A model generated the notes under the pieces. The model searched no databases. It worked only from the letters and a program-made list of their open reading frames with translations, and was not told where the DNA came from. The position numbers and the translations under genes are program-made. Shown here one piece after another: positions 313 through 28,462 of a DNA stretch of 64,000 bases (position 1 is the first letter of the stretch; every line of letters begins with the position of its first letter). The stretch is taken from the IMG/VR virus record IMGVR_UViG_3300042923_000601, positions 124,001 through 188,000 of that record; one strand, given 5' to 3'.

Positions 313-324
313 AACAACATGATA
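313..324 (+). promoter_or_regulatory. AR9-type late promoter AACA-N6-TA
   Basis: AACA ACATGA TA upstream of the giant fibre gene; the same motif precedes many structural genes in the window. Confidence 0.65.
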
Positions 325-369
325 AGTACATGTATCAAAATCATACTTACACGAAGGGGGATAAGCCCG

Positions 370-9300: not shown

Positions 9301-12300
9301 TGGGTTGCTGCCAATAAAGCACCGGGCTGGACTGGTTGGGCGACGCTTGATTATGTGATGACATCAGCACCAGCACCTGTACCGATTCGACTCTCTGAAG
9401 GCAGCATCTCTCTACATGGTGGCGTAAACCAGATTATGGTTGAAACCGGGGTCATCCAACGGGAAAAAGCTAAGCCGATCTATGACAACGGATTTTGGAA
9501 CATCAACGCCCAAGTCGGAAGTAACAACGATTCAAAACTTGCATACCGCACTAAACGGACACTAGCTATCTATAAAGACGCTAACATCGATCCAAGCTGG
9601 ATTGTTGGAACACGTCCAAGTACAAGCACACTGATTCCACTATTCGGCAATGATGGGGTTCAGGCTCCGACTGCCATGTATGATCCAACTGCTACTTATT
9701 ACGTCACATATCTGGTATTAGATCAGTATGCTGTGACTCCTAGTCTTACGAATATCAGTGCATCGTGGAAAACCGGTCTTAACGGTGTAGTAACATCCCT
9801 TGCACACGATGTCGCCATGCTTCAGGCAGACAACGATCGTCAGGACTTTGCTGACAAGTATCTGAATGACAAAGTGGCAGTGTTGCAAAACCTCTACCCT
9901 ACCACACTTACAGGAGATTTTGCCATCAATGCAAACGGTAAAGACCTTCTGCAAATGGTTGTAGCTGCTGGTAATGGATTTAAGACGCTTTGCGCCAATT
10001 CAACATCCACTAACATACCTTCTGGGGTAACATTCCGAGGGCATTCTTTTGGATCAGTTGGGTCTGACGGGGAGTGGACTGGCTTTGTACAGCTGTACAG
10101 TCAGCTTAACACTAACTTCAGTAACTTCCGGTACGGTGCTTCCGGTTGGGGTGGTTGGCAGAAAAACATCAATGAAAATATGGCATCCGGTGAAACTCGC
10201 GTCAATGCTATCAGCCTCGGCGGGTATAATGTTGAGAAGACGAAGTCGTATGCGATCCCAAATACCTTAACTAACGCAAAAATGGATATTACTTGGGAAC
10301 CAGTTCTTAGTTCCGGCACGGTGGAAATCACAGTCACATGTGGATTTAACACTGTGAACGCGAACGGGGTTATCCGAAAGGTGATCAGCTACGGCTCAAA
10401 CGCATCAGGTGGAATCAATCCGTATAACTCCTATTACAAAGAGGTACTTGGACCAATCAAGAACTACCTTGGTGTATCGGAGCTGGTATACGACTCAACT
10501 ACCGCAAATTTAAAAATTACGGTAGAGACACTAGCCAATGGGTACGTGTTTGGTGGTACTGTAACGGTGAAGTTTCTTTCATCTATGGGACGCGCTGTTC
10601 CAAATATCACAATCGGTGATCCGTACTCTGGTGCTTCCCTCGGGTCAGTTGTCCCTGTACAGGTAATACCGGATGATACAGTAACTACCTCCGGATACCA
10701 GATTCAGAAGCATCCGCTGACGAACAATATCGGTCAAAATATTCTACTGACGGCCAACACCGACCTCAACACCGTTGTTACAGCAGGTTTCTACAGCGGA
10801 AATGGATTAACAAATGCTCCAACCAATGAAGTAACATGGTGGTATGTTCAGGTATATGTACACAGCGGGTCTGTCGGGTATGTATTACAGAGAGCCTATC
10901 ATTTGAGTGCAACTGGAACGCCGACCGAGTATATTCGCCGCAGGGTCAATAATACTTGGACAACATGGGTTTACGTACCAAATAGCAGTATGCTTAATGT
11001 GGCAAACGGTATTCTACAACTGGACAGCAGCGGACTCGCACCACTGGCACAACTCCCAGCTATTCAGAAATGGCTGCTTACTAGCAATACTGGTTCTGGT
11101 AAGGATGGTGTTGCAACGTACGACCTCAACACACTCATTACCACAGGGTACTATTCCATAAATACCAACAGCACGAATATGCCGATATCAGGATCATCCA
11201 CCATGCTTCTTGTGATGTACTTCGGATCGACATACTACCAGCAAGAAGCTACAGTCTATGCAACAGGGCCAGTGGTTCGTAAGTTCGTTCGCGAAACACG
11301 AAACTCTGGTACTACTTGGACCGCATGGGCGGAAATCGAAACAACTGCTAAAAAGGATGTCGCGAACGGTTATGCAGGGTTAAATGCCAGCGGGGTTTTA
11401 CTACCTTCTGTCATGCCAGCCACTGTGACCAAACGGGTCAACCTGTATGGACAGCTTCAGATTACGTCATATCGTAGATCGGTTGTTGCGCTTTGCGAAG
11501 TGACAAACACTGAACCTGGGGCTACTTCCTATACCAATGGCGTACTCACCTTCAAGCGTGTTAATGGGCTTGCTGGACAGACTACCATTATGGTAAGTGC
11601 TGAAAAACGATGGAGTAGTACAGCGATGAATATCTCAGTCCTTAAGATGGGATTGACTGGTGCTGCCATTCGCCCATGTACGTTTACGTATAATGGTGTG
11701 AAATACGGTGGACTTGAAATCTATATCGAGGCTGCTGAATCGCAACTGGTTGAGTTTAATGGTGCTGGTAACTTCACACCGTTTGGTGTGGATTACTATA
11801 CCGTAAACACATCCACTGTCGTTAATGCCGAGATAAACAACTCGCTTGGGCTTGTCGAGGGAACCGACTTCTATTACATCAACGGGATTTTCATGAATGA
11901 TGTCAGTATTTCCCCTACGACAGACTCAATTGCGAACAGACCAGTGCTACGCGACAGTAACAAAAAGATCGCAGAAGTTGCATCTACTCGTAGCAACGGG
12001 GTCAACATTGCCCTTACTGCCACGAATACGTTGACAACAGCTGTCTCTTACACCACGTCAGGTGTCGTAGCGAACTATGTTGTGTATGTCACAATATGGC
12101 CAAGCGTAGCGACCACATTAACAATCCAACTGACGTACACTTCACCAATGGGAGGCTCACAAACTACGGTGATCTTAAACGCCAAACAGCTTGCAGCCGG
12201 GGCTGAGTCTAGCCTAATCCCACTGTACGTTACAGCAAATGCATTCTCAACTATGAACCTCCAGTATCTGAGCACGACGACGAACTCGACGAATCCTCTG

Positions 12301-12330
12301 AGAATATCGTACACAATACAGGAGATGTAA
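370..12330 (+). CDS. Giant modular tail fibre / receptor-binding protein (~3990 aa)
   Basis: Likely start ATG 370 after GAAGGGGG (track start 319). Contains the fibre motifs DNPNVVTKAQVGLSNVDN and PTVPTAPDGTRNKQAASTEF, four ~730-aa cassettes each opening with NGRTLVNxLG and carrying carbohydrate-binding-like beta domains, and C-terminal knob-like repeats (DLNTVVTAGFY / DLNTLITTGYY). Confidence 0.85.
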   Translation: MSLPYVLSELGKLSNSLTNVIQQIETQLGNGTLTLDGLKSDIQAILNSAGQANGLAPLNGTATINKQYLPPIQELVKHGNEWHDKAYVTQTEIDTSVSAYAARRDNPNVVTKAQVGLSNVDNVKQEPYRNLGLNAKSATDLPNTYPVGISYMLADSTKGFPFTGVHNGVMTYNLSDGTTSTYQFAFNYENARVPRIRVRSATLGNTAWGDWAVMYTSAEPPTKADLGLGNVQNYPVATDAEAAAGVSNVTYMTPARTKTTVDAAVSSVSNTQVLGPGTNLVTAGKEGAELDLKVNGRTLVNILGTMGSGESVANWGISGTAPTISTTQKRSGTASFKFSTTDTSGVLVKDLAIPLDKSKYYMVTCWAYVESYTSGGATLNIREYNTSNVRYNVSVNTTKVGEWQQLLLKVPNNNTISTTEGFRIIAGVNTTGTMVVYYDELRLYEVSAAEYAAIGTTLATPEQIDAYFPYVDGKQHVQGVAITKQGKNLLLPLTQRGTNNGTVIDAYAFDHPALVAFGNGYMTYDVIPNTDYVFSAVPGATGQMGVYNDTATVALSDYANTPRAFNSGANTKVRIYFRNTVVGTVRFSDLQLEFGTVATPFAPAEPQTVVLPVTLGEVGGIKDSVSNAGTEWLYTERVRKNVVIDGSLTWAYNDSPGTGLRVVKTAMAGGSSAMPVRTVLYDGRVGGSHLPAGTNNRASATTDTFYIMVSNAEAGWTDTLTPSANAIKALMNGWEAVANNGTTYTSWTSILDGSVAPTNTEAWVAANKAPSWSAWCSLDYALGTAAIPVTISSAEGAISLHPGGNQVTVETGIIQREKIAPQLSTTYGRYYINEVGATVSAVDSPLKYKTNRILDVYAGGTKAKWISETNASNQNGTAIASILTADYDASKTYYATYIALDKYLMTPSVAEVNASWKSGLNGVVPELAQSVADLKSAMDYPVLYSPEMLGEPTVPTAPDGTRNKQAASTEFAAKVAESYANAKFIKEDHTQAISQGLSIINGGETGADVDFSINGRTLVNLLGNYGNFEVDSNNDGLGDGWIRQGGTLTLSTTGVAYGTKSQRITSTSSDTSITDRGMYRYVWLEASKYYVAIAHLTTDGTTIGMIRMEEGASGTNIDTSSSVNQTLFIKFSPVATKNFVFRVFNRAPVGSVGWIEIDGISIYEVDAATYARIGVDITASNIRTYLPYVDGKQHLQNIVISKQGLNLMPNAPESVSTVAKLDGPYAMTLVATAAGQSSFWDIPVKPGVTYTIRAELTGTVGIIARTLFKEDLSTNAAYATALTSTGTYTFTAFEGSAFVRVYFNSTAAGTSTLKNWMMVVGDATALPTTFVPSDIPQTVILPVTLGETSGVTDTVYNSGSEWLYVERIKKNVPLVGGLAWAFNTTFTGVKRLSLALSPAALSGFSSARVVRYDGLQFKNNETTASGNPNVSQISNNQLLLNLATADTGWVDALTPNTNAIKAFFNGWKATANNGTAYTTWASSIDGSAPATNTEAWVAENKAPGMTTWGTVDYVLASAEVPTAVSAAEGSITLHPGNNQISVNTGVIVREKVNPVFYVSGNYYVINNIATTQNLYLSMLKYRMADVVTLYEESTVFNRYIKRAHGNAYGTYQMEISPSNFDTTKDYYLTYIARDKPAFSGFVTDMTANWKTGITGTVTELVQAVAELRNGDDTKMYHNPHFTGEPTVPTAADGTRTKQAASTEFTGRAIDNFSASKLQRADNVQVLSQGTNIIDGGDTGGDLDLTVNGRTLVNLLGNYGSGESLSGWSLAGTTVPTISTTQKRSGTSSFKMATGATGGSYLFRDFNTSLQSTKQYVVAGWAFVESWSSVAAGPSITLYDVGTNTQKYQVLGDKAIIGSWQPLVLKVPTSNTLVGTGFRILIGHGSAGASVSYYSDIRLYEVTAAEYAAIGTTITGDAFDTAFPYVNGRQHVQGVAITKQGQNLLASKPPVLNARARMNGPYDMVLDATGGNDSSYFLIDVPANTTITLSLAHNGRVAIANAAGTVNLVGYSSSQLLTVNTGSNTTIGVHFSNYSAGTGTFTFKNWMLVIGDATALPSTFTPAEPQTAILPVTLSQIGDARDTVYKEGSDWMYNERIKKGVTLTGALPWTLGTSYTGYKYVTVQSSNFPGMYMDKTAANISTAPPLRVTKYNGEPVTHAVSFSSEGSDRFNYGTDVSKVDITVSSGDSGWGDSYSPSAAEIAAYFYGYRMNNGTFGTAYNGTGTKTWAVIGATNNTGAVTVVPTSQAPITALWSPYILDYTLSSAAAPSFIPNAEGDITLHPGKNQIAVETGIIQREKVTPSPYLTNYYINALSGDKLSLRPSRILQVYKGNNADSKWIQITRSTSEEPSYSVYGPAYAIIKSGDFDPTATYYVTYVVAQKHTRSANLSDVTTSWKSGINGVVAELTQAVADLRESIDYPVLYSPEILGEPTVPTAPDGTRNKQAASTEFAARVAENYTAATLDGVTNVQTLASGVSLITADKVGSDLDLIINGRTLVNILGTVGGGESLTGTIPAGVAPVISTTQKRSGLSSYKYVPTASSPSYFYKDYTVSLDKSKYYVLGAWFYTESTANTGMTEVSLRDAGSFTARYSIYGAQSVTGSWQWRFAKIPANNTLVGNGFRLLVGMGGGYAGVFYIDDIRLYEITAAEYNAIGTTIDGDAVDQYYPYVDGKKHTQGLAITKFGRNLLDGIPITLHANAKMNGLYDLTLTATATWSHSWLPTIPVVGGRKMTFSIDPLTVNGAYVYVFEYDSNGTQLSSVGAVANINFSSLTFTTNTQTVTIRVQLTNAIASGTFTFKNWKLEYGDKTPFEPAAPQNVIIPVTLGQIGDVTDTVYNAGSDWMYAERIKKDVVLDGSLTWGVYSTVTGFKNVQAAIPSLSGTGGADDAALAVRYDGIPLKNVDEAVASWTQPDYFRLYNGSVYMSIRSTDSGWTDALNPNVNAVKAFMNGWKAVGSNGTVYTSWVSILDASVPTTNTEAWVAANKAPGWTGWATLDYVMTSAPAPVPIRLSEGSISLHGGVNQIMVETGVIQREKAKPIYDNGFWNINAQVGSNNDSKLAYRTKRTLAIYKDANIDPSWIVGTRPSTSTLIPLFGNDGVQAPTAMYDPTATYYVTYLVLDQYAVTPSLTNISASWKTGLNGVVTSLAHDVAMLQADNDRQDFADKYLNDKVAVLQNLYPTTLTGDFAINANGKDLLQMVVAAGNGFKTLCANSTSTNIPSGVTFRGHSFGSVGSDGEWTGFVQLYSQLNTNFSNFRYGASGWGGWQKNINENMASGETRVNAISLGGYNVEKTKSYAIPNTLTNAKMDITWEPVLSSGTVEITVTCGFNTVNANGVIRKVISYGSNASGGINPYNSYYKEVLGPIKNYLGVSELVYDSTTANLKITVETLANGYVFGGTVTVKFLSSMGRAVPNITIGDPYSGASLGSVVPVQVIPDDTVTTSGYQIQKHPLTNNIGQNILLTANTDLNTVVTAGFYSGNGLTNAPTNEVTWWYVQVYVHSGSVGYVLQRAYHLSATGTPTEYIRRRVNNTWTTWVYVPNSSMLNVANGILQLDSSGLAPLAQLPAIQKWLLTSNTGSGKDGVATYDLNTLITTGYYSINTNSTNMPISGSSTMLLVMYFGSTYYQQEATVYATGPVVRKFVRETRNSGTTWTAWAEIETTAKKDVANGYAGLNASGVLLPSVMPATVTKRVNLYGQLQITSYRRSVVALCEVTNTEPGATSYTNGVLTFKRVNGLAGQTTIMVSAEKRWSSTAMNISVLKMGLTGAAIRPCTFTYNGVKYGGLEIYIEAAESQLVEFNGAGNFTPFGVDYYTVNTSTVVNAEINNSLGLVEGTDFYYINGIFMNDVSISPTTDSIANRPVLRDSNKKIAEVASTRSNGVNIALTATNTLTTAVSYTTSGVVANYVVYVTIWPSVATTLTIQLTYTSPMGGSQTTVILNAKQLAAGAESSLIPLYVTANAFSTMNLQYLSTTTNSTNPLRISYTIQEM

Positions 12331-16628: not shown

Positions 16629-16658
16629 AGTGAACCTAGATTTGTTGCTAGGTTCACT
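16629..16658 (-). terminator. Hairpin/terminator after the ppk operon
   Basis: AGTGAACCTAG / CTAGGTTCACT perfect 11-bp stem. Confidence 0.7.
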
Positions 16659-16688: not shown

Positions 16689-16910
16689 TTACGGCTTGAA
16701 CGGCGGTGTGATTTGAACACCAAGATCATGCGCCATCGTAAAAAGTTGGCGTGTTTCTGCCGTAAGATGCATCATTGCAATGGCAGCAAGCGAGACCTCG
16801 ATCTCATCCATTGACTGCACAATGATATCAGAATGGTGTTCGATCTGCTGGCTCAGATTGTTGACACGAGCCTGAATGTGCATTCGAGTTAGCTCTAATG
16901 CTTTATCCAT
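16689..16910 (-). CDS. Hypothetical protein (73 aa)
   Basis: GGGAG RBS; directly downstream of ppk. Confidence 0.6.
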   Translation of the reverse strand: MDKALELTRMHIQARVNNLSQQIEHHSDIIVQSMDEIEVSLAAIAMMHLTAETRQLFTMAHDLGVQITPPFKP

Positions 16911-16928: not shown

Positions 16929-19900
16929 TTATCTAATGAAATACTTGTGAGCATCCAGGGATGACGGTGCATCAGGTGCCGCACCATCTTCACCCCGAAC
17001 AAGGTTTAATTCACGGTAAGGAACATACCCTACAGCATAACTGATGAAACTATTCTCCGTATCATCCAGCAATACCTGAAGGTTTCCTTGTACCCGCAGT
17101 TTAAGGTTTGGATCAGATACCATGAACATCAACTCCAACCGGCGATCCAGATTACGGGTCATCAGGTCGGAAGAACTGAGGAATACATCATCCCCGAATT
17201 GGAATACCCGGCTGTGCTCAAGGAACCGGCCAACAATCGATTTTACTTTGATATTTTCGCTGTACCCTGGAATACCTGCAATCAGAGAGCAAGCTGACCG
17301 GCAAATGATATCGATATTAACACCGGCATTAGATGCTTGATACAGTTTTTCCGCCATACCAGGGTCAGACAGATTGTTCACCTTAATGATAATTCGGCCA
17401 TCAGACCCAAGCGCGATCTGCTGGTCAATCAAGGTGTATAAGGTTGACCGGATTGCAATTGGTGCAATCTTGATATTGTTAAGCTGACTATCTTCGGAGA
17501 TGAATCCGCCAGTCAGCATGTTAAAGATACTATTGATATCCGAGCAGACTTTCTTATCCGAAGTGAAGTAGCTGTAATCGGTATACACCTTGGAGTTCTT
17601 TTCACTGTAGTTACCAGTGCCGATATGACAGAACTGTTCACCTGTCTTTCCTTTGAGGCGGAATACATGAGTCATCTTGGCATGAGTCTTAATATGCTCA
17701 TAACCATAGACAACGGTTGCACCTGCCCGCTGGAGTTTATCTGCCCATTCAATATTGGTTCCTTCATCATACCGAGCTTTAAGTTCCATTACCACGGTCA
17801 CGTTCTTTCCAGCCTCAGCCGCTTTGATCAGGTGACGGATGATCTTAGAATCATTACCCGACCGGTACAGCGTCTGTTTGATGGAAATGACATGAGGGTC
17901 TTCGCATGCATCGCGGATGAATCGTACGACGCTATCAGTGAAGCTTTCATACGGATGATGTACCAGCACATCCCGTTTCGCAATCCGAGCCAGCATCGTT
18001 TTCTTATTATGCTCTTCATACAGTGGACGCGGCTTGAAGTGAGGGTACTTAAGTGCAGGGTCATCAGATGCTTTATACAGCTGAATGACATCCGACATTT
18101 TGATCCGTTCTTGAACGTGGAATACATACCGGCTTGGGATATCCAAGGACGACTGAAGTGCTGATTTGATTTTCTTATTCGCACCAGCCAAGATATCCAG
18201 TCGAACCGGATCGTTGTACAGCATACGGCTTTGGACATTCATAACCATTGTTTCCACATAACCTTTATCCTCATCCACAACCACAGTGTCACCATCGCGG
18301 ATCACACGGAAAATCGTGATATCAGAGCAGGTTGAACCCGGATAGAGATCAGTGATGTTAGCAAGGATGATGTCTTCGATGAAGTACCAACCGTGTTTAC
18401 CGATCTTAACAATCCGATCCAAGTGGGTTGGGATTTCGATCAGCCCCATACGTTCAGTACCGTCTGCTGTCTCTACAAAGAGTGCAATGTAGATAGAGAG
18501 TGGTTTAAGGTGCGGGATTGGACGAGTCACATCCAGAGCCAGTGGTGCAAGTGCAGGCTTGATAGTGTAATTGAAGTACTTCTTGACCTTGTTACGTTCA
18601 AAATCGGTCAGGATGTGAATGTCAGACTCAGCCAGCTTGTCAATTAAATGCCGATATGTGGAATCCATTCGTTCCACCATGGACTTGCATTCGCTGATAA
18701 TGTTATTAACGACCTGACGGTCTTCGACTTCATCTTCTTCCTCATCATCCAGTTCTTCATCGTCTTTGAGTCTGGATGCTACACGAACAGCGAAGAATTC
18801 ATCCAGATTAGAGTTCGCGATAGATAAGAACTTCACTCGTTCCAGGAGAGGTGTAGTGTCCTTATCTGCAAGGGACAATACCCGATTGTTGAAGCTTATC
18901 CAGGAAAGCTCCCGGTCAATGTAGGGCATTTCAGCCGTATTAATTCCAGTTGTCATTGTAGTACCTCCGTTTACTTTGTTGATTATATCATCAGTGTTAG
19001 CCATTAAATCAGGATGCTGGAAATCAAGGATCATGGCTTCAATATCAGCCAAACTTCTTTCTATACCATGCACATTCTTCAGTTTCTTCTGTATCTTTTC
19101 AGCAACCGTTGGTGTAGATTCTAACTTAAATCGGCCGAAGTGTGCAGGTGGCGTAGGATCAAGAATTTGAGTCATCCGTAGAATGATCTCCTTAATGTCA
19201 TGTAACTCCATTGATATATTACATATCGATTTCAGATCACGCTGAATCTCAACTGGTGTCTTGTATATGGGCCCAGCCTCATACTCTGCCTGAGACCGAA
19301 AAGTGTGCTCTTCGTTATCTTGCAGTATTGTTATGATCGCATCAAACTGCTGGGGTATACCTATTGGCAGGGTTTGTGCCGTTCTTAGAACAGACATCGC
19401 ATGCTTTACCGGTATATTAGGTTTGTTGAATAACATAGGCGCAATTCGAATATCTTCTTTATTGACAATAATTCTGTCATTAATCTTCGCACCTAGCTTA
19501 TCTTTGTCGAAGTTCAACCTTACAGGTTCGGCGTTAATCGTCTTAACTAGCCGGTCGTATTGCTGGATAGTGGATGTGATCAGTTTAATACCCACGTCCA
19601 CACCATAATCAGACTTCAGTATGCCATCAATCTCGTCTGGCGTCAGGTGCACAGCATCTTCTCCACGCTCAGCCCATTGTATATAAGCCTGAGAATTTTG
19701 AAGTAATGCTATGATAGCCTTGAATATTTTTGAAATACTGAGTGATGACCACGGTATCGAGGTCAACGTATGCCTAGCTTCATCCGCCGTCAGCTGATTA
19801 TCAAAGAAGGCAGGTGCAATTCTAATGCCTTCGTCATCAATAATGATTCTTTTAAAGCGAACCTTCGGCGCATCCGCGCTATGGCTTCCGCCACGTCCAG

Positions 19901-20051
19901 GTTCATTGTCAGTTCTGGTTTCACTCCCTTCATCGTCAAGCTGTGTATTTTCATTGTTGTTACTGGTCTCAACGTCAGAAAGCATTTCGCCAGAACGAGT
20001 TCCCCCGTCATTCATTCCATTTCCACTCGCACTGCCGTTCGTTTCGTTCAT
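16929..20051 (-). CDS. ppk1: Polyphosphate kinase 1 with a ~365-aa N-terminal extension
   Basis: Motifs DRELSWISFNNRVL, SNLDEFFAVRV, DVLVHHPYESF, IKQTLYR, ELKARYDE, KTHAK (phospho-His), HIGTGNY, SIVGRFLEHSRV and MTRNLDRRLE. RBS GGAGG at the 5' start; a second GGAGG precedes the in-frame ATG at 18956. Confidence 0.93.
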   Translation of the reverse strand: MNETNGSASGNGMNDGGTRSGEMLSDVETSNNNENTQLDDEGSETRTDNEPGRGGSHSADAPKVRFKRIIIDDEGIRIAPAFFDNQLTADEARHTLTSIPWSSLSISKIFKAIIALLQNSQAYIQWAERGEDAVHLTPDEIDGILKSDYGVDVGIKLITSTIQQYDRLVKTINAEPVRLNFDKDKLGAKINDRIIVNKEDIRIAPMLFNKPNIPVKHAMSVLRTAQTLPIGIPQQFDAIITILQDNEEHTFRSQAEYEAGPIYKTPVEIQRDLKSICNISMELHDIKEIILRMTQILDPTPPAHFGRFKLESTPTVAEKIQKKLKNVHGIERSLADIEAMILDFQHPDLMANTDDIINKVNGGTTMTTGINTAEMPYIDRELSWISFNNRVLSLADKDTTPLLERVKFLSIANSNLDEFFAVRVASRLKDDEELDDEEEDEVEDRQVVNNIISECKSMVERMDSTYRHLIDKLAESDIHILTDFERNKVKKYFNYTIKPALAPLALDVTRPIPHLKPLSIYIALFVETADGTERMGLIEIPTHLDRIVKIGKHGWYFIEDIILANITDLYPGSTCSDITIFRVIRDGDTVVVDEDKGYVETMVMNVQSRMLYNDPVRLDILAGANKKIKSALQSSLDIPSRYVFHVQERIKMSDVIQLYKASDDPALKYPHFKPRPLYEEHNKKTMLARIAKRDVLVHHPYESFTDSVVRFIRDACEDPHVISIKQTLYRSGNDSKIIRHLIKAAEAGKNVTVVMELKARYDEGTNIEWADKLQRAGATVVYGYEHIKTHAKMTHVFRLKGKTGEQFCHIGTGNYSEKNSKVYTDYSYFTSDKKVCSDINSIFNMLTGGFISEDSQLNNIKIAPIAIRSTLYTLIDQQIALGSDGRIIIKVNNLSDPGMAEKLYQASNAGVNIDIICRSACSLIAGIPGYSENIKVKSIVGRFLEHSRVFQFGDDVFLSSSDLMTRNLDRRLELMFMVSDPNLKLRVQGNLQVLLDDTENSFISYAVGYVPYRELNLVRGEDGAAPDAPSSLDAHKYFIR

Positions 20052-20092
20052 AACTTAAATTCCTCCAGTATAGTTAGGATGTGATACACTTG

Positions 20093-20105
20093 TATAATAT
20101 ATACC
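20093..20105 (-). promoter_or_regulatory. Early-type AT-rich promoter (GGTATATATTATA)
   Basis: Recurrent motif upstream of non-structural genes; resembles the phiKZ early promoter TATATTAC. Confidence 0.6.
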
Positions 20106-20144
20106 TGAAATCAATAATATTTGCACGTTATGCTATGTGTAAGA

Positions 20145-20156
20145 AACAATAGGATA
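20145..20156 (+). promoter_or_regulatory. Late promoter AACA-N6-TA
   Basis: AACA ATAGGA TA upstream of 20172. Confidence 0.6.
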
Positions 20157-20171
20157 ATCTAAGATAAAGGA

Positions 20172-20555
20172 GTGAAAGCCATGCTGACACCATCTGAATT
20201 TTTGATCATCGTCGCTGTGGTAGCTGGTGCAATTGCAGTTACCGGTCGCTGGGTATATTACAAAAGAACGGGGAAAGAACTGGTTGAGGGTGATAGCAAC
20301 CTGATTCTGAATCTCCGCAACACAGTGGTATCGACTCTCCTCGAAGGTATTCACCTGAAGGAAATCGAAACCGAGCAAGGTCGAGATGCTGTCCGGGATG
20401 AAATCGCAGCTAAGGCTAAGCAAATCCTCGCTGAAACCACAGCTTTGACGGAAGGTGAAAAGGAGCTTGTATCCAAGCTCGACTTCACATTATTCATTGC
20501 ACTGGTTGAGAAGGAACTTATTAGTCGCGGTGTACTCGAACCTGAGAAATCATAA
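20172..20555 (+). CDS. N-terminally anchored membrane protein, possibly holin-like (LL-H-type architecture)
   Basis: Single N-terminal TM FLIIVAVVAGAIAV followed by a charged helical domain; late-type promoter. Confidence 0.5.
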   Translation: MKAMLTPSEFLIIVAVVAGAIAVTGRWVYYKRTGKELVEGDSNLILNLRNTVVSTLLEGIHLKEIETEQGRDAVRDEIAAKAKQILAETTALTEGEKELVSKLDFTLFIALVEKELISRGVLEPEKS

Positions 20556-20561
20556 GAAGAA

Positions 20562-20587
20562 CGGACATGGAGATTCCTCCATGTCCG
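20562..20587. terminator. Bidirectional terminator
   Basis: CGGACATGGAG / CTCCATGTCCG between convergent genes. Confidence 0.8.
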
Positions 20588-21937: not shown

Positions 21938-23455
21938 TTACGAAGCATTTTCACCCAGAGCGTAGAGTTCAGACAGGATCAAGATGTAGTCCTTAATGAA
22001 CTTCATGCGCTCAGAATAGTTACCATGCGTACGAGACACATAGTTGTATTTCGGGCTGAGGGTTGGTTCGAAGGTCTTGATCAATCTCCAGTCCTTCATT
22101 GGGAAGTAGTACAAGCTGTCCCCGTCATGGTCTCCCGCATATCCGTCAAGCAGAGATGGTGAGATACGCATACACAGGTCGTCAATGTCATTACCAACAG
22201 CCACGACTTGCAGTAGACGAATGGAACGGTCAGATAGAGTAGGTGGACGACCAACCATTACACAAATCGGCGTCTTGGACTCTTTCAAGATCGTCATCAT
22301 CAGTGCATAGATACGTGGATTGTAAATCCGCAGGCTATCGTTGATGATCTTGTAAGCTTCATTCTCCGTAATATCATCCAAGATACACAAGAGGTGAATC
22401 AACTCAAGTTCAAGGAATACGATACCTGTAATGTACGGGATTTGAACATCGCATGGTCTAAGATGTACACCTGGGATGATGATGCTTCGGGCCGCGTAGT
22501 CAATACGAACGCCACCGAAGTTCGATCGGAACATCCCTTCTTTACCGGAATACGTATCAACCAGCCATGCATACAGGTCATTCAGTTTCTGCTGAATACC
22601 ATGCAGTGCGGGCACGATGGTCAGCTCGTTATCCGGCTCCGTTACGATCAGGTTGTATTGAGACATGATCATACCATAGAGCTTGTTCGGTTTAAAGGCA
22701 CGAACCTTTTCATTATTCTCGATATGCGGGCGAATGATCGCGCTGTATACCGGGATATAGTTAGTAAAGATCGATTCCTTGTCCCTAACCAGGAGCTCGT
22801 AATGATCACGCTTCTTATTGGCTGTATCAAGACCCATATAGAAATCAAGGATTTCGTCAATGTGCTTATACAGATACATCATGCCTACATTATGGTATCG
22901 TTTACGCGGCTCAACATCATCTCTGAGATTCCCATCGACTGACCATCTGGCGGTGCTCATCTTGAGGATGTTCTCAAGTTCGCCTTTACCAAACAAGATG
23001 TTCATATGGGTATACATAGCTGGGTTGATAACCACATACTGCTGCAGGGGAATCCAGCCCATGATGCTAAGGTCAGCATCCATGAATTTAACTGGTGTTC
23101 CGCACACTGGGCAAATCTCATCAATGGAAATTGCACCGCCTGTTTCACCGCACTGACACCGGTAAGCATCTTGCCGTCCGGTTTGGTTGTCGAATTGGGT
23201 GTAACCATAACGAGGTGAGAAGATACCGTCCACGGTTTTATTGCCAGCTTTATCAATGGCTTCAGGGTTTGTCACAAGGAAGTCTTTCCCGGACTTAAGA
23301 CCCTTCTCCGCCTCTTTACGGAGATTTACTTTAATCAACTGCTCAGATTCGATGGACTGATCATAGTCCTCAAAGTAGCGTTTAACCTCGGGTAATTGGA
23401 ATTGCTTGACGTCACCATAGTCGATGACGTCTCCGTTTAACATAACTTCTTGCAT
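21938..23455 (-). CDS. Phage RNA polymerase beta'-like subunit, N-terminal half (Zn finger, clamp, catalytic DPBB)
   Basis: Start ATG 23455 after GGAGG. Motifs DGIFSPRYG, CQCG..CPVC, GKEGMFRSNFGGVRIDYAARSII, GRPPTL and catalytic loop YAGDHDGD. Confidence 0.9.
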   Translation of the reverse strand: MQEVMLNGDVIDYGDVKQFQLPEVKRYFEDYDQSIESEQLIKVNLRKEAEKGLKSGKDFLVTNPEAIDKAGNKTVDGIFSPRYGYTQFDNQTGRQDAYRCQCGETGGAISIDEICPVCGTPVKFMDADLSIMGWIPLQQYVVINPAMYTHMNILFGKGELENILKMSTARWSVDGNLRDDVEPRKRYHNVGMMYLYKHIDEILDFYMGLDTANKKRDHYELLVRDKESIFTNYIPVYSAIIRPHIENNEKVRAFKPNKLYGMIMSQYNLIVTEPDNELTIVPALHGIQQKLNDLYAWLVDTYSGKEGMFRSNFGGVRIDYAARSIIIPGVHLRPCDVQIPYITGIVFLELELIHLLCILDDITENEAYKIINDSLRIYNPRIYALMMTILKESKTPICVMVGRPPTLSDRSIRLLQVVAVGNDIDDLCMRISPSLLDGYAGDHDGDSLYYFPMKDWRLIKTFEPTLSPKYNYVSRTHGNYSERMKFIKDYILILSELYALGENAS

Positions 23456-23469
23456 ATTGTGTCTGCCTC

Positions 23470-24048
23470 CTATTGCTTTTTGTGTATACTGCGTCCTACT
23501 TCTTTGTATAAAAGATCGCAAAATACCTTCATATGAGTTTTGCGGAATTCGACCGGTAAATTTGGCACTCCCACTAATTCATATGGGAATGCATACTTGC
23601 CGATGTGTTTATACGGGATGATTTCGTTAGACATGTGCTTGAGAAATATGGTTCGTCTACCTTCATGAATATCTTTCCGAGTAAGTTCGGTGAATTCAGA
23701 TAAGTATCGCCACTCATGATAGATTTTCTCCGGCGCGTAGGTTGTCATTTCAACCGCCGTGTTAACAAAGATTAAAATCGTTTCGATCAGGATCATTTCC
23801 AGCAACTGACCGAACTTTGCTCTTTCTACAGCGCCGTAATTTGCCTTGATGGCAGCCACGATAGCGTTTGGTGATATCGTAACTTCTCTTACAACGGTTC
23901 TTGCACGGCCGGTAAACTTAAACCGGACCAGTTCACCAGTGGGTATATTCCCAATGATAACGTTCGTTGCTAATTTCAGGCTGTTATCTCCCCTACAGAC
24001 CTGAATCATTTCGTTGAGCCGCCTCTTGACTCTCCGTTTACTGAACAT
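23470..24048 (-). CDS. Hypothetical protein (192 aa) co-transcribed with beta'-N
   Basis: GGGAGGG RBS; early-type promoter upstream. Confidence 0.65.
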   Translation of the reverse strand: MFSKRRVKRRLNEMIQVCRGDNSLKLATNVIIGNIPTGELVRFKFTGRARTVVREVTISPNAIVAAIKANYGAVERAKFGQLLEMILIETILIFVNTAVEMTTYAPEKIYHEWRYLSEFTELTRKDIHEGRRTIFLKHMSNEIIPYKHIGKYAFPYELVGVPNLPVEFRKTHMKVFCDLLYKEVGRSIHKKQ

Positions 24049-24169: not shown

Positions 24170-25369
24170 TTATTTACCGATAAGGTCATCCACCGTCACG
24201 CGGTAAGTATAAACCTTTTTGTTATGGAACGCCTTAAGCCGCTTATTCATCATCGTCGATCCAATCTTGGACGACGCTATACCAACGGCTTTAAGTTTAA
24301 GTCTATACGATTGTGAACCCAGACATGCATTACAGATATGCGGTTTAGGCTGGTGGCAGAACATTGGTGATCTAAACTTCATCCGTCTTCCCTCATACTG
24401 CTTGAAGTTTTCAGGGGTCAGTTCCACCAACTTCTTACCATCAATCATATTCATGTACATGAGTTCGTTCTTAAAGAATGGGTCTACAACCATGTGGATG
24501 TACCCATCAGTACCGCAGTCTGAACCCTTTGGTCCAGATGCAACGTCTTGCAGGGTTGCAATAAACTTCTGAGCTGCATAACCACCCATCGCAACCCCTT
24601 TAGCGCGCTGGAATGTACCATATACAGCTGAGTCAGCAAGCAAGTGATACTCTTCTTTGGATATCCCGTCATCGTAGTTTGAGGTAGCGATCTTCCAATC
24701 GCCTGTCCCTGTATCAACGATCGGACCCTTCATGAGCATCATGGTCTTGAAGTTATTATCGAAATTGAGCTTCGCGTCAGAAGCAAAGTTATCCCACTCT
24801 GGGAGTTTCTCCAAATGCTTCTTCGCCATATCAACCAGCTCTTTTTCAATCTTCGCGCCGACGATAACATCACCCTCGGCGATTTCCTTCGCGTATTTCT
24901 TAAAGAGCATTGCGCGGTGTTCCTTGACCTCTTTCGGGATGGTAAAGAGTCTAGGCGAGAGTGATACATTGATCAATTCTGCCAAATCACCACCACCAAG
25001 CCAGTCAAGAGAGTCAATTAACTCAAAGAACTGCGCAGACACAATCTTGTCTTCAAACAGGGCTTGGGAGATTAACGTGTAAATTTTCTTTAGCACGCCG
25101 CCTGTAATCGGGGTGTTTACATAACCAACCACATCCGAGAAATGTTTATCGATAACCAAGCGGTTAAAGATGTACAATCCGATTGTGGTCAGACCCTTTA
25201 TATTTTTGCAGCATGCATTCTCCGGTAAGAAGAACCAATCTGTTGTGGTGAACCTTGGTGTTGGGTTATTGCGTGTCCGGCCAAAGTAACTCTTCAGCAG
25301 CGTGGTTGTGATGTCGTCTTGTGTTAACTTAATGACTTCCTGTATTTCTTCGGGAGTCAGTGATCTCAT
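24170..25369 (-). CDS. Phage RNA polymerase beta'-like subunit, C-terminal/middle part (bridge helix to trigger loop)
   Basis: Bridge-helix-like AKGVAMGGYAAQKF, QD...SDCGT, RSPMFC, Zn motif ICNACLG, and trigger-loop-like KIGSTMMNKRLKAFH. Confidence 0.88.
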   Translation of the reverse strand: MRSLTPEEIQEVIKLTQDDITTTLLKSYFGRTRNNPTPRFTTTDWFFLPENACCKNIKGLTTIGLYIFNRLVIDKHFSDVVGYVNTPITGGVLKKIYTLISQALFEDKIVSAQFFELIDSLDWLGGGDLAELINVSLSPRLFTIPKEVKEHRAMLFKKYAKEIAEGDVIVGAKIEKELVDMAKKHLEKLPEWDNFASDAKLNFDNNFKTMMLMKGPIVDTGTGDWKIATSNYDDGISKEEYHLLADSAVYGTFQRAKGVAMGGYAAQKFIATLQDVASGPKGSDCGTDGYIHMVVDPFFKNELMYMNMIDGKKLVELTPENFKQYEGRRMKFRSPMFCHQPKPHICNACLGSQSYRLKLKAVGIASSKIGSTMMNKRLKAFHNKKVYTYRVTVDDLIGK

Positions 25370-25383: not shown

Positions 25384-26211
25384 TTAGATGATGTACACCT
25401 TATACGAGAAGGTGAAGAATGATTCAGCATCCCGCAAGAACATGTTTGGAATGTTAAGCTTGGTCACCGCACGCACACCTGCAAAGTCGGTTCCATCAAG
25501 GAAGCCAGCGATCAGGGTGATACTGTTGAATCGGCAGTTTGCGATGTTACCATACGTTGCCACGTACCACTCACGTACATCTTGCGGTGAAATCGTGAAT
25601 ACGACTTCTGCGAACGCAAGAATGCCAAGTGTAGTGTCCACACTGTCAATGTTCGGAGGAACTTCAGTTCCATCGGTGAACAGGTGACGAACGACCGGGT
25701 CTACGTCAAAGCGTTTACCGTAATAATAGAACTTAGAACCAACCTGTTTCTTCATGGCGTACTTGGCCTGGTCGGCTGTAGACAAGTCAGCGGTAGTGTC
25801 AACCACACGAATCGGGATCATACCGGATACGGATTTGTCTTTGAACTTAACAGCGCGGATCAAGTCAGGTGTTTCTACACCGGCATTACCGATCATGATG
25901 CCAAAGATCGTCTCATTTTTGAGGTTATCTTGGTTCGGCGTGATCGTATGTTTGATCTGCAGGTCTTGGGATAGCGTGGTCTGTCCAAATGACGACCGAC
26001 GTTTAAACATTTGCTCCAAGATGTACGTGGAACCCGGGAGAATGATATCATTGAATCGAAACATCTTTCTCCCAGTGATCCCATTCGTGATTTCAAGCAC
26101 ACCAACTACCTTTGTTTTGTCCAGCCCTCCGACGAGCAAACGCCCATCGGAAAGCATAAGTTCATCACGAACGCCTACCTTATCTGTTAAACTATCCGGA
26201 AATATATTCAT
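25384..26211 (-). CDS. Probable baseplate/tail structural protein (275 aa)
   Basis: In the late operon with the 756-aa protein; beta-rich; GGAGG RBS. Confidence 0.55.
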   Translation of the reverse strand: MNIFPDSLTDKVGVRDELMLSDGRLLVGGLDKTKVVGVLEITNGITGRKMFRFNDIILPGSTYILEQMFKRRSSFGQTTLSQDLQIKHTITPNQDNLKNETIFGIMIGNAGVETPDLIRAVKFKDKSVSGMIPIRVVDTTADLSTADQAKYAMKKQVGSKFYYYGKRFDVDPVVRHLFTDGTEVPPNIDSVDTTLGILAFAEVVFTISPQDVREWYVATYGNIANCRFNSITLIAGFLDGTDFAGVRAVTKLNIPNMFLRDAESFFTFSYKVYII

Positions 26212-28462
26212 ACTGACTACCTCCTAATTGGGCTATAATTTCAAGATCATCGGTAACGCGAATCGAAGTCTCTTTCTTTAGTGTTCCCCGAATACCGACA
26301 TCGTCGACCACAGTAACGTTGTTATGGTAGAATGCGGTACCGGCTGCACTGTATGAATCCACCACTTTGATATTATTGAGCATATCGTCAATATTGTAAG
26401 TGACAGACATAGAGAATACATTGATCGAGAACGCTTTAAAGGTATTGATGAGTTTAAGGACATACGTCTTGAGGATATTCTCACTTGATACGGTCGGCAT
26501 CTTTAAGAAGACGTAATCAAACCGTGTTGTTTGAATATACTCCTCTAGAGTAGTGAGTAATTTGAAGATTGTGGTGTCGATTAGATCGTCATCCAGGTTT
26601 TCAAGATAAATACCCACAACTTGGTTAGCCGCCGATAGGTAGTCCTGATACGTTTCAGCGATCTGACCGTTTGGTTTTGTGAATACTGAGGCGGATAGTT
26701 TTGACTGACTCATGTATCGGAGCAATTCACTTACCGTTTGGTATTCAGCAAGGCTCCGAGTCGAGGTCTTGATAGCCAGTAGGCGATCGTAAACCTCTTT
26801 GTTTCGGAAGTACAGGTTAATGAGTTCAGACGGCTGGGTAAATGGGCCTGGTGGAAGGATTGCAGATACATTCCCAGGCACGGTGTAGCCATATTTCTTC
26901 ATGATTGCATCAACGTCTGCCATATTTCGGTCAAAGTTGAACTTGTGTACGACGGCAATATCAATCGGGTCAGTGATAATGTCACCCGCAAAGCCTACCT
27001 TGCGGCTAGTCAATGCTGCCAGCATATTGATAGCATAGAAAAGGGTGATACGTTGTCCAAGGAAAGGCTCTGTCAGTACCAATCGATCCAGTGACGCACG
27101 AAGTGCCATCGTCATAGATAAGAAGTAAGATACTTCAAAGGACAGTTTGGACATATTGTACGCAGTATTGATATTGATGTAGTCCGTGTCAATATAGTTG
27201 AAAGGCTTCTCAAGGAGTTTCTGTCTGATACCTTCCTTGGACTCGTAGCCTCCCCAGTACGGGTCATCGGTAACCACATCTACGTAGGCCAACCGGTTCT
27301 CTGGTTTACGAATCTCATTGTCGATATTGGTTGAGTTAATATCAACCTGTGCGAAGTTAACATCGTACATTTCGTCATACTTTGGTGTCACACCGTCGGC
27401 CTCGTATGAGAAGATATAGTTATCGTCTGAGTCCTTCAGGTGTTCCTTTACCAAGATGAATTTACGGACAGTGATGTCATCAAAGCCAAAGATTGAGAAT
27501 ATCTTTGCGATAACTTCATCCGTGCCTCTAGATACGATTAGGGAGTTGATGTTGTCCGCAATCTTCTTACGGTACACAAACGGAATGTCATCGAAGATAT
27601 CAAGTTTATAGGACTGAAGTAGATTATGGATCATAAGTTCATTGGTGTATTCCTTGGCATTATAAATATCAATGGCTTCGTTAATGGTCATAATTAAGGC
27701 GTTTACCATAATCATAAAGCCGATGTATGAATCGAAGTACGTCTGGTCAACAGAAAATCGCCGATTGTAGTAGTTGTTAAGAATGTAAGTCTGGGATCGG
27801 ATATAGTTGACATCAAACCGCTGTTTAATAAAGGCATTGTTCGGCGGGGATGACCGGATAATATCAAACCGCTTAGCTTCACGGGCAGTCATAACCCCAA
27901 TCCGATTCGCACCCAAGTACTTCAGGTACGCACGGTCAGGATACTTCGTCTTCAGGGATTCAATGTATCCCATATTATTCAGAATGAAGATTTCATCATC
28001 CGTCATTTCATGGACGGGCTTAGAAACATCAACCCCCTGGATAGGAGCCTGAATGTAGATTTTGAGATAATCGGTTGTAGATGGGAGGCCATTGAGCATT
28101 CGGTAGTAGTTGTTCTTCTCCTCGAACTCTTCCAATATCTTCTCCCGTTTAAGCTCAACCAGTGCATCACGAAGCTCATATGGGATATTCCGCTTAGATT
28201 TAAGCGCCTCTGCAATCTGTGCAGTTGTTAACCCAACGGCTTCTAATAGATCAACCTCAAAGTTCAGATACGTATCGAAGGTATCACTACCCCGTATAAC
28301 AGCAGCGTATTCTTCATAATTGCGAAGTGTGTCTAACGTCTCACCGGCGTTAGCCAAATCTTCTCGCTTTACAACGACGTTTGCCATCATTGCTATAAGT
28401 TCTTTCGCCAGTTCCATTACATATGACGCTTCAACATTAAGTTCATCAGCCACTCTGATCAC
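26192..28462 (-). CDS. Probable baseplate-wedge-like virion protein (756 aa)
   Basis: GTG start; motifs EEKNNYYRMLNGLP and RGTDEVIAKIFSIFGF recalled from jumbo-phage structural proteins; late-like promoter upstream. Confidence 0.55.
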   Translation of the reverse strand: MIRVADELNVEASYVMELAKELIAMMANVVVKREDLANAGETLDTLRNYEEYAAVIRGSDTFDTYLNFEVDLLEAVGLTTAQIAEALKSKRNIPYELRDALVELKREKILEEFEEKNNYYRMLNGLPSTTDYLKIYIQAPIQGVDVSKPVHEMTDDEIFILNNMGYIESLKTKYPDRAYLKYLGANRIGVMTAREAKRFDIIRSSPPNNAFIKQRFDVNYIRSQTYILNNYYNRRFSVDQTYFDSYIGFMIMVNALIMTINEAIDIYNAKEYTNELMIHNLLQSYKLDIFDDIPFVYRKKIADNINSLIVSRGTDEVIAKIFSIFGFDDITVRKFILVKEHLKDSDDNYIFSYEADGVTPKYDEMYDVNFAQVDINSTNIDNEIRKPENRLAYVDVVTDDPYWGGYESKEGIRQKLLEKPFNYIDTDYININTAYNMSKLSFEVSYFLSMTMALRASLDRLVLTEPFLGQRITLFYAINMLAALTSRKVGFAGDIITDPIDIAVVHKFNFDRNMADVDAIMKKYGYTVPGNVSAILPPGPFTQPSELINLYFRNKEVYDRLLAIKTSTRSLAEYQTVSELLRYMSQSKLSASVFTKPNGQIAETYQDYLSAANQVVGIYLENLDDDLIDTTIFKLLTTLEEYIQTTRFDYVFLKMPTVSSENILKTYVLKLINTFKAFSINVFSMSVTYNIDDMLNNIKVVDSYSAAGTAFYHNNVTVVDDVGIRGTLKKETSIRVTDDLEIIAQLGGSQYEYISG

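What the first reader, a model, noticed from the sequence alone, without database searches (positions are those of the whole stretch)
18957..20051. PPK1 fused to three HTH-like repeats with an internal second start: a candidate DNA-tethered polyP synthase system
The extension has two ~125-aa repeats (RIIxxxExIRIAPxxF) and three copies of a winged-HTH-like motif: TPDEIDGILKSDYGVDVGIKLI, TPVEIQRDLKSICNISMELHDI and TVAEKIQKKLKNVHGIERSLADI. A GGAGG RBS precedes the in-frame ATG at 18956 (MTTGINTAEMPYIDRE), so both a long form and a canonical-length (675-aa) form could be made. The long form could localise polyP synthesis to phage or host DNA, for example to build a replication compartment or condensate or to remodel the nucleoid. 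I know of no described PPK1 with this architecture.
Basis: partly seen in the sequence, partly recalled or inferred. Interest (0 to 1): 0.8.

Follow-up and report, generated by a model that had tools for sequence, protein, structure and literature searches.

The report
Phage polyphosphate kinase with orphan N-terminal repeats
A jumbo phage from soil encodes an intact polyphosphate kinase (PPK1) with a 365-residue front end unlike any known protein, made of an acidic tail and a duplicated new domain. It probably also makes the plain enzyme from an internal start, and nothing supports the idea that the front end binds DNA.

Summary
Window 16929..20051 (-) is one 1040-codon ORF.

- **Enzyme part:** aa 366-1040 are a complete PPK1. 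It passes the TIGR03705 equivalog cut-off, aligns end to end with E. coli PPK, and keeps both active-site histidines.
- **Extension:** aa 1-365 comprise an acidic disordered head (1-61), two ~125-aa copies of one domain (29% identical, z = 14 against shuffles), and a third partial copy.
- **Internal start:** GGAGG-7 nt-ATG sits at codon 366. It is the only truly internal ATG of 450 in 28 genes with such a site, in a phage that otherwise avoids GGAGG inside genes.
- **Fusion is real:** a ~98% identical strain in a second soil sample (another study) carries the same junction without indels.

The interpretation does not hold.
- The extension has no HTH or any other family match and no homologue in any database searched.
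- A confident model of one repeat (pLDDT 84.5) matches no solved or viral fold.
- The extension is acidic (pI 5.1, net -15).

Related jumbo-phage PPK1s form their own clade with conserved gene order. They carry unrelated acidic N-terminal extensions of 17-131 aa.

I read this as a lineage-specific, fast-evolving, non-catalytic appendage for targeting, assembly or regulation. Two isoforms are likely. It is a new variant of a known enzyme and of moderate interest.

The parts
16929..20051 (-). Whole ORF: 1040 aa plus the stop codon, the long form of the phage PPK1.
   Evidence: It is listed as P0001 on the 246,689-bp contig IMGVR_UViG_3300042923_000601.
20062..20066 (-). GGAGG Shine-Dalgarno of the long start, 10 nt before the ATG at 20051..20049.
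   Evidence: Most genes of the window have GGAGG-like sites 7-10 nt upstream of the start.
19869..20051 (-). aa 1-61: acidic, polar, low-complexity head, probably disordered (pI 4.05, net -10).
   Evidence: The sister protein P0002 starts with a head of similar composition.
19494..19868 (-). aa 62-186: repeat 1 of the orphan alpha/beta domain. It contains the beta-hairpin RIIIDDEGIRIAPAFF and the helix-loop-helix TPDEIDGILKSDYGVDVGIKLI.
   Evidence: The AF2 model has pLDDT 84.5 and pTM 0.78 and no fold match.
19122..19493 (-). aa 187-310: repeat 2 of the same domain.
   Evidence: 29% identity to repeat 1 over 105 aa, z = 14.
19017..19121 (-). aa 311-345: partial third copy, holding only the terminal helix-loop-helix of the repeat.
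   Evidence: Resembles repeat 2 (z = 4.9; 1 of 2000 shuffles) but not repeat 1. Alignment A1.
18957..19016 (-). aa 346-365: linker. It contains the internal GGAGG (18968..18964), read as codons N-G-G-T.
18954..18956 (-). In-frame ATG of codon 366, the candidate second start, which would give a 675-aa canonical-length PPK1.
   Evidence: It is the only truly internal ATG of 450 with GGAGG 4-11 nt upstream. It lies 8 residues before the position aligned with residue 3 of E. coli PPK. The local mRNA is weakly structured (z +0.5).
16932..18956 (-). aa 366-1040: complete PPK1. Domains: N (aa 377-481), middle/head (485-658), C1 (686-848) and C2 (862-1002). The KTHAK histidine lies in aa 788-792 and the LEHSR histidine in aa 944-948.
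   Evidence: Pfam. TIGR03705 scores 676 bits against a cut-off of 466. 1XDO alignment with E 3e-95.
20052..20171 (.). 120-nt divergent intergenic region upstream of the long start. It probably holds the promoter(s) for PPK and for the opposite small membrane-protein gene.
   Evidence: Three sigma-70-like matches on the minus strand at 20067-20143, though overall such matches occur at chance frequency.
16629..16658 (-). Terminator-like hairpin after the small 73-aa ORF (16689..16910) that follows PPK. It is the likely end of the transcription unit.

Best explanation
The gene encodes a catalytically competent phage PPK1 with a lineage-specific, non-catalytic N-terminal appendage.

Shown:
- It is one real ORF.
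- The PPK1 part is complete and keeps its active-site histidines.
- The appendage is an acidic disordered head, two tandem copies of an orphan ~120-aa alpha/beta domain, and a partial third copy. It grew by internal duplication.
- PPK1s of related jumbo phages sit in the same gene order. They carry unrelated acidic N-terminal extensions of very different length.
- A perfect SD plus ATG lies exactly at the appendage/enzyme boundary.

Inferred:
- The appendage is a fast-evolving adaptor. It controls where, with what partner, or in what oligomeric state the kinase works, through protein-protein contacts or self-association via its amphipathic helix pairs. The acidic head may also keep the enzyme off polyanions or act as an autoinhibitory mimic of the product.
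- It is not a sequence-reading DNA-binding module.
- The phage makes two isoforms from one mRNA: the decorated 1040-aa form and the bare 675-aa enzyme.
- The enzyme itself interconverts ATP and polyP during infection of a starved soil Firmicute-like host.
For: 1. Real and fused.
2. PPK1 complete.
3. Repeats.
4. Compact domain with no known fold: pLDDT 84.5 and pTM 0.78; no PDB or BFVD match.
5. No homologue of the extension in 5.8 billion clusters, 1.84 billion representatives, INPHARED phages, IMG/VR or JGI metagenomes.
6. Native codon usage.
7. Phage PPK1 clade: support 100/100. P0001 is sister to P0002 (98/97). Long extensions (61-375 aa) are scattered among short ones.
8. Extensions of relatives: all acidic (pI 4.0-5.0) and mutually unrelated.
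9. Conserved synteny: RNAP beta' piece, then the 420-aa protein, then the small opposite-strand gene, then PPK.
10. Internal SD-ATG is unique among 450 internal ATGs, and GGAGG is depleted in coding sequence.
11. One relative (P0006, locus L006) also has GGAGG-8 nt-ATG at the boundary.
12. The motif has a heptad-like I/L pattern.
Against: - No direct evidence for any partner, localisation or oligomerisation.
- The AF2 model rests on a pseudo-alignment of the protein's own three repeats, so its confidence may be inflated. The lack of fold matches could then reflect a wrong model.
- The internal SD-ATG is absent in three of the four relatives with long extensions. It could be a relic.
- Neutral or acidic proteins can still bind DNA through a local basic patch.
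- No expression or proteomic data exist for this uncultured phage.
Confidence: 0.5

Rival explanations
1. The repeats are (winged) HTH-like DNA-binding modules that tether the long isoform to phage or host DNA, so that polyP is made on the nucleoid or a replication compartment.
For: - Each repeat ends in a predicted helix-loop-helix.
- The tandem arrangement would suit binding of repeated or extended sites.
- Sub-threshold Foldseek rows include a few DNA-binding proteins (Fur, TEA domain, integrase N-terminal domain), but with probability <= 0.23 and TM <= 0.34, which is chance level.
- PolyP is known to act on bacterial chromatin (review PMC11894788).
Against: - No HTH, wHTH, SAP or AbrB family hit, even at E <= 10.
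- No fold match to any of the many solved HTH domains.
- The order of secondary-structure elements is not that of a wHTH.
- The extension is acidic (net -15; repeats -2 and 0).
- The motif's only PDB resemblance is to coiled-coil zippers.
Confidence: 0.12
2. Relic model. The SD-ATG at codon 366 is only the leftover start of an ancestral canonical-length gene. The extension is a recently accreted, weakly constrained add-on. Only one form, long or short, matters functionally.
For: - Short-extension relatives start 17-43 aa before the PYxDRE motif.
- The internal SD is missing in P0002, P0005 and P0009.
- Extensions are hypervariable across the clade.
Against: - The two repeats have diverged to 29% identity yet still model as a compact domain with native codon usage. 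That argues for long-term maintenance as protein.
- GGAGG is selected against inside genes of this phage, yet a perfect one persists here at ideal spacing.
Confidence: 0.2
3. Packaging model. The N-terminal appendage is a targeting or pro-region that loads PPK into the capsid, or onto another phage structure, for delivery with the DNA. Other jumbo-phage virion proteins carry N-terminal pro-regions (my own knowledge of phiKZ-like phages).
For: The gene lies directly downstream, on the same strand, of RNAP beta and beta' pieces and a virion structural protein. The variable N-termini would fit phage-specific targeting.
Against: - No proteomic or sequence evidence.
- No recognisable protease motif was tested.
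- A terminator (20562-20587) and an opposite-strand gene separate PPK from that block.
Confidence: 0.08
4. Artefact. Two adjacent genes were fused by an assembly or sequencing error, or by a very recent mutation.
For: The base after the internal ATG gives ATGA, the typical overlap of coupled genes.
Against: - An independent assembly is identical, and a ~98% strain from another sample and study bridges the junction without indels.
- No alternative-frame ORF ends at that TGA.
- Relatives have no separate gene there.
Confidence: 0.03

Closest known systems
Bacterial polyphosphate kinase 1 (E. coli PPK, PDB 1XDO/1XDP; TIGR03705)
   Same: aa 374-1004 align with residues 3-654 of the E. coli chain (E 3e-95). 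There are four domains in the same order, and the KTHAK and LEHSR histidines are kept.
   Different: There are 365 extra N-terminal residues with no counterpart. An acidic insert lies in the N domain (aa 430-444). The gene is phage-borne and belongs to a separate, long-stemmed clade.
PPK1 of related uncultured jumbo phages (P0002-P0015; contigs up to 258 kb)
   Same: 50-67% identity in the enzyme part. The neighbourhood is the same (RNAP beta' piece, 420-aa protein, small opposite-strand membrane protein). The N-terminal extensions are acidic.
   Different: Their extensions are 17-131 aa, unrelated in sequence to this one and to each other, and lack the repeat domain.
Dictyostelium discoideum PPK1 (Zhang et al. 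2007, PNAS 104:16486)
   Same: From my own recollection of the paper, it is a PPK1 with an N-terminal extension of about 370 aa that has no known homologue and is needed for activity and localisation. The text was not held here; only the citation was seen.
   Different: It is eukaryotic. Homology of the two extensions was not tested because no sequence was at hand. No repeats or internal start are known to me there.
Winged helix-turn-helix DNA-binding domains
   Same: A helix-loop-helix ends each repeat, and a beta-hairpin is present in the domain.
   Different: The hairpin is N-terminal and four helices and a strand separate it from the helix pair. There is no family or fold match, and the charge is acidic.
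In-frame dual-start bacterial and phage genes that give a long and a short isoform (for example ClpB, IF2, lambda S; own knowledge)
   Same: Two in-frame ATGs, each with its own strong SD, on one mRNA.
   Different: Here the two starts are 365 codons apart and bracket a whole multi-domain module. No protein evidence exists.

Membership tests
Polyphosphate kinase 1 (PPK1) | Four domains (PP_kinase_N, PP_kinase middle, C1, C2) in order, each above the Pfam gathering score. | tested here: met
   104.9, 117.4, 219.3 and 167.3 bits, against cut-offs of 23.8-31.
Polyphosphate kinase 1 (PPK1) | Whole-protein score above the NCBIfam equivalog cut-off (TIGR03705). | tested here: met
   676.1 bits against a cut-off of 465.85, covering aa 377-1005.
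Polyphosphate kinase 1 (PPK1) | The autophosphorylated histidine of the C1 HxK motif and the C2 histidine (E. coli H435 and H592; numbering from memory) are conserved. | tested here: met
   the alignment puts the query's ikTHAKm opposite E. coli's lkiHAKl, and leHsRv opposite leHdRv. Positions are aa 790 and 946.
Polyphosphate kinase 1 (PPK1) | ATP-dependent polyP synthesis. | not testable with these tools
   This needs an enzyme assay.
Winged HTH / HTH DNA-binding domain | Sequence match to an HTH-clan family. | tested here: not met
   no Pfam or NCBIfam family matches the whole extension or single repeats at E <= 10 (Pfam) or E <= 0.1 (NCBIfam).
Winged HTH / HTH DNA-binding domain | Three-helix core followed by a beta-hairpin wing, superposable on solved wHTH domains. 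| tested here: not met
   One search gives the topology beta-beta-alpha-alpha-alpha-alpha-beta-alpha-alpha. In one search the best PDB match has E 0.54, and no match of more than ~30 aligned columns exceeds TM 0.34. Caveat: the model was built from a 3-row pseudo-alignment.
Winged HTH / HTH DNA-binding domain | Basic DNA-facing surface. | tested here: inconclusive
   net charge is -2 (repeat 1), 0 (repeat 2) and -15 (whole extension). Surface electrostatics were not computed because no coordinates were available.
Winged HTH / HTH DNA-binding domain | Binds DNA. | not testable with these tools
   Needs EMSA or anisotropy.
In-frame dual-start gene (two isoforms) | Internal in-frame start codon with a Shine-Dalgarno site at functional spacing. 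| tested here: met
   GGAGG-7 nt-ATG, unique among 450 internal ATGs. GGAGG is depleted in coding sequence.
In-frame dual-start gene (two isoforms) | The internal start is conserved in relatives that carry an extension. | tested here: inconclusive
   present in P0006 (GGAGG-8 nt-ATG) and absent in P0002, P0005 and P0009. Their extensions are not homologous.
In-frame dual-start gene (two isoforms) | Two protein products observed. | not testable with these tools
   No RNA or proteome data exist for this uncultured phage. Only DNA runs hold it.
N-terminally extended PPK1 of the Dictyostelium type | The extension is homologous to that of DdPPK1. | not tested
   No DdPPK1 sequence was returned by any tool. 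The exhaustive phmmer search of the extension found no relative at all, so homology is unlikely.

The most novel reading that the evidence does not exclude
The duplicated orphan domain is a new fold that docks the long isoform onto a polyanion or a phage-built structure, such as phage DNA, a replication compartment or the capsid interior. PolyP synthesis, or polyP-driven ATP regeneration, would then be spatially confined. The internally initiated short isoform would supply free enzyme. This would be a two-isoform, spatially programmed polyP system in a jumbo phage.
Probability: 0.12. Interest if true: 0.75.

Novelty: new variant of a known kind. Interest (0 to 1): 0.4.

Why it matters
- PPK1 genes in phages are usually noted only as auxiliary metabolic genes. 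Here a whole clade of jumbo-phage PPK1s keeps a fixed genomic position next to the phage RNA-polymerase genes, while its acidic N-terminus keeps changing. This suggests the enzyme is wired into phage-specific biology rather than carried along passively.
- The window's copy is the extreme case. It has a 365-aa appendage built by duplication of a domain with no known relative or fold, plus a probable second start.
- If the appendage proves to target or regulate the kinase, it would be a handle on what polyP does during infection. It would also add a new domain family.
- If not, it is an example of rapid de novo-like domain growth on a conserved enzyme.

Tried and rejected
- **Family searches on the extension.** Pfam, PHROGs, NCBIfam and PADLOC on the extension, and Pfam at E <= 10 on single repeats: nothing.
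- **Homologue searches.** Three word-index searches: the extension as a region of the full protein, the PPK region and the extension alone. Exhaustive phmmer over 1.84 billion representatives. tblastn against phages. IMG/VR and JGI metagenome scans with the protein and with the repeat alignment. All found only the protein itself.
- **P0121.** The single other hit is a 2608-aa protein built from many near-identical repeat units. Fourteen short, weak repeat matches add up in it, so I judged it spurious.
- **ESM Atlas.** Scores were 0.5-0.57, which is uninformative.
- **AF2 on aa 60-365 without an alignment.** pLDDT 37.5, unusable.
- **AbrB/MraZ and SAP/HeH leads.** From memory, the DxxGIRIAP hairpin recalled AbrB/MraZ and the TPxEI...LK...GI...L..I motif recalled SAP/HeH. 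Neither got any support from Pfam or Foldseek.
- **Genes upstream of PPK in relative L008 (188 and 218 aa).** Tested as possible split versions of the extension. hhalign probability was <= 0.2%.
- **Paralogues of the repeat.** None elsewhere in the window or in relatives' loci.
- **Sigma-70 promoter scan.** Matches occur at chance frequency.
- **Literature.** No paper on PPK in jumbo phages. The Dictyostelium PPK1 paper is not held.
Full report
**What is there**

The minus strand of window 16929..20051 carries one uninterrupted ORF of 1040 codons. The window is part of IMGVR_UViG_3300042923_000601, a 246,689-bp viral contig. It has no near relative among deposited phages. Its split RNA polymerase beta' piece is most like those of AR9/PBS1, phiR1-37 and the Staphylococcus jumbo phages, at 23-29% identity. 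Runs that hold the sequence are soil and silage metagenomes. A relative's locus encodes SLH and Amidase_3 lysis proteins, and nearly all genes use GGAGG-type ribosome-binding sites. I infer a Firmicute-like host.

**The enzyme part**

- Residues 377-1002 carry the four PPK1 domains in order, each far above its cut-off.
- The protein passes the NCBIfam PPK1 equivalog threshold, 676 against 466 bits.
- Residues 374-1004 align with residues 3-654 of E. coli PPK (1XDO, E 3e-95). This includes the histidine of the KTHAK motif (aa 790) and that of LEHSR (aa 946).

I take the enzyme to be active. This is inferred from conservation and has not been assayed.

**The extension**

Residues 1-365 match no family in Pfam, PHROGs, NCBIfam or PADLOC. 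Single repeats also find no Pfam family at E <= 10.

- aa 68-172 and 193-297 are 29% identical over 105 residues.
- The alignment score is 14 standard deviations above shuffles, and no shuffle comes close.
- A third segment (aa 311-345) copies only the terminal helix-loop-helix. It resembles repeat 2 (z = 4.9) but not repeat 1.

The layout is therefore:

| Segment | Residues |
|---|---|
| Acidic low-complexity head | 1-61 |
| Repeat 1 | 62-186 |
| Repeat 2 | 187-310 |
| Partial repeat | 311-345 |
| Linker | 346-365 |
| PPK1 | 366-1040 |

Codon usage of the extension fits the phage's genes in frame 0 only, and its GC content is typical. It is native coding sequence. The duplication is old enough to have decayed to 29% protein identity.

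**Is it a real fusion?**

- A 239-kb Logan contig is identical over 16700-20700, but may come from the source sample.
- More tellingly, a ~98% identical strain in a different soil sample and study yields contigs that bridge 18802-19013 (the junction), 19026-19464 and 19650-20573, with substitutions only and no indels.
- A more distant relative from silage shares the head and first hairpin, then diverges at 19801. It matches again at 19177-19289 and from 18978 downstream.
- In the loci of related phages the small opposite-strand gene is followed directly by PPK. No separate gene occupies the place of the extension.
- No alternative-frame ORF ends at the ATGA of codon 366.

The lost-stop and artefact explanations are therefore very unlikely.

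**The second start**

GGAGG (18968..18964) lies 7 nt before the in-frame ATG of codon 366. I scanned 28 genes of the window, 17,382 codons with 450 internal in-frame ATGs. Only two ATGs have GGAGG 4-11 nt upstream. One is this site. The other is codon 23 of the RNAP beta' ORF, which is evidently that gene's true start.

GGAGG is under-represented inside genes: 25 observed against 46 +/- 6 after codon shuffling. The site sits 8 residues before the position that aligns with residue 3 of E. coli PPK, where a canonical PPK1 would begin. The surrounding mRNA is weakly structured.

Among the four relatives with long extensions, P0006 also has GGAGG-8 nt-ATG five residues before the PYIDRE motif. P0002, P0005 and P0009 do not.

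I consider production of both a 1040-aa and a 675-aa form likely, at roughly 0.5-0.6, but unproven. A relic of an ancestral start is the alternative.

**Is the extension an HTH or DNA-binding module?**

The evidence is negative on every test I could run.
- No sequence family matches.
- Folding aa 60-365 alone failed, with pLDDT 37.5.
- Folding repeat 1 with the protein's own repeats as the alignment gave a confident model: pLDDT 84.5, pTM 0.78, and all five models at 71 or above. The order of elements is beta-beta-alpha(short)-alpha-alpha-alpha-beta-alpha-alpha. A winged helix has a three-helix core followed by the hairpin wing, which is a different order.
- Foldseek against 350,542 PDB chains and against BFVD returned nothing better than E 0.37-0.54, with TM <= 0.38. 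A canonical wHTH would have found many matches.
- A profile of the repeats against PDB sequences hit only GCN4-type isoleucine-zipper tags, over profile positions ~73-105 (E 2e-4 to 1e-2). This reflects a 3-4 spaced I/L pattern, that is, amphipathic helices.
- The extension is acidic: pI 5.1 and net -15, with repeats at -2 and 0.

None of this excludes DNA binding, but nothing supports it. One caveat applies: the model rests on a three-row pseudo-alignment.

**Evolutionary setting**

The closest PPK1s (50-67% identity) come from uncultured contigs of up to 258 kb. Together with this protein they form a clade with 100/100 support on a long stem, apart from bacterial PPK1s. The window's protein is sister to P0002 (98/97).

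Gene order is conserved: RNAP beta' piece, a 417-420-aa protein (phrog_21946), a small opposite-strand single-pass membrane protein (33-45% identical across five phages), then PPK.

The segment before the conserved PYxDRE motif ranges from 17 to 131 aa in relatives and is 375 aa here. Long and short versions are interleaved on the tree. All are acidic, with pI 4.0-5.0. None is detectably similar to another. The N-terminus of this phage enzyme is thus a hot spot of innovation, and the window's copy is its most elaborate product.

**Best explanation**

The gene is a functional phage PPK1 with a lineage-specific, non-catalytic appendage that arose by duplication of an orphan domain.
- Shown: the anatomy, the reality of the fusion, the lack of relatives, and the clade pattern.
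- Inferred: the appendage acts as an adaptor for partner binding, self-association or localisation, possibly with an autoinhibitory or anti-sticking acidic head. The internal start supplies the undecorated enzyme.

Rivals, with my estimates:

| Rival | Estimate |
|---|---|
| DNA tether | 0.12 |
| Relic start with a weakly constrained add-on | 0.2 |
| Virion or structure targeting | 0.08 |
| Artefact | 0.03 |

**Comparison with what is known**

Phage-borne PPK1 genes are already annotated, for example in Vibrio phages GR7B and GR11A. From memory, an unrelated ~370-aa N-terminal extension is known on Dictyostelium PPK1 (Zhang et al. 2007). That paper could not be read here.

The new features are the orphan duplicated domain, the probable dual start, and the recognition of a jumbo-phage PPK1 clade with hypervariable acidic N-termini. 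I found no paper on PPK in jumbo phages.

Verdict: a new variant of a known kind, with interest 0.4.

Noticed in passing
window 20172..20555 (+), probable start at 20181; L003:7506-7874, L004:7516-7893, L006:7514-7879, L008:1968-2339: A small protein of about 124 aa with one N-terminal transmembrane helix is 33-45% identical across five phages. In four of them it is transcribed divergently right next to PPK, so it may be a conserved partner. It has no significant family match (FliL at E 0.0012, below its cut-off).
   Followed up: partly
P0002-P0015; loci L003, L004, L006: Jumbo-phage PPK1s form a separate clade (100/100) with conserved synteny to an RNAP beta' piece and a phrog_21946 protein. 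Their N-terminal extensions are all acidic, of very different length, and mutually unrelated.
   Followed up: yes
L006:8001-10382 (P0006): This relative has GGAGG-8 nt-ATG at codon 90, five residues before PYIDRE, while its annotated start has only a poor SD. Either it also has a dual start, or its 94-aa extension is a gene-calling artefact.
   Followed up: partly
window 18720..18764 (aa 430-444): An acidic insert (DDEELDDEEEDEVED) lies inside the PPK N domain, and similar acidic runs occur in the relatives. In the read-laying, unrelated contigs pile up here because of the low-complexity GAA/GAG sequence, which explains the depth spikes at 18710-18843.
   Followed up: no
window 21938..23521 (-): This ORF is the RNAP beta' N-terminal piece. 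Its real start is probably the ATG of codon 23 (23455), which has GGAGG 10 nt upstream, not the TTG of the longest ORF. An RNAP beta piece (24170..25369) and a virion structural protein (26192..28462) lie further upstream on the same strand.
   Followed up: partly
window 319..12330 (+) and 50303..60685 (+): There are two giant ORFs. The 4003-aa one has no Pfam match at all. The 3460-aa one ends in Peptidase_C39_2, SLT transglycosylase and VanY domains, so it is a likely cell-wall-degrading virion or ejection protein.
   Followed up: no
window 20562..20587: A perfect 11-bp-stem hairpin with T-runs on both strands lies between the convergent 420-aa gene and the small membrane-protein gene. It is probably a bidirectional terminator and isolates PPK from the RNAP/virion gene block.
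   Followed up: no
window 19801 (run X3, silage metagenome): A relative at about 88-90% identity shares the acidic head and the first beta-hairpin of repeat 1, then diverges completely at 19801. It matches again only at 19177-19289 and below 18978. The repeat region therefore varies even among close relatives.
   Followed up: partly
L006:4100-4864 and 13933-18382: The neighbourhood of the related 258-kb phage encodes an anti-Pycsar Apyc1-like metallo-beta-lactamase-fold protein and two radical SAM proteins.
   Followed up: no
window 16689..16910 (-): A 73-aa helical ORF with its own SD follows PPK by 18 nt and precedes a terminator-like hairpin (16629-16658), so it is probably co-transcribed. 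It is not conserved at that position in relatives, and its only family matches are far below cut-off (Phasin_2 at E 0.049).
   Followed up: partly
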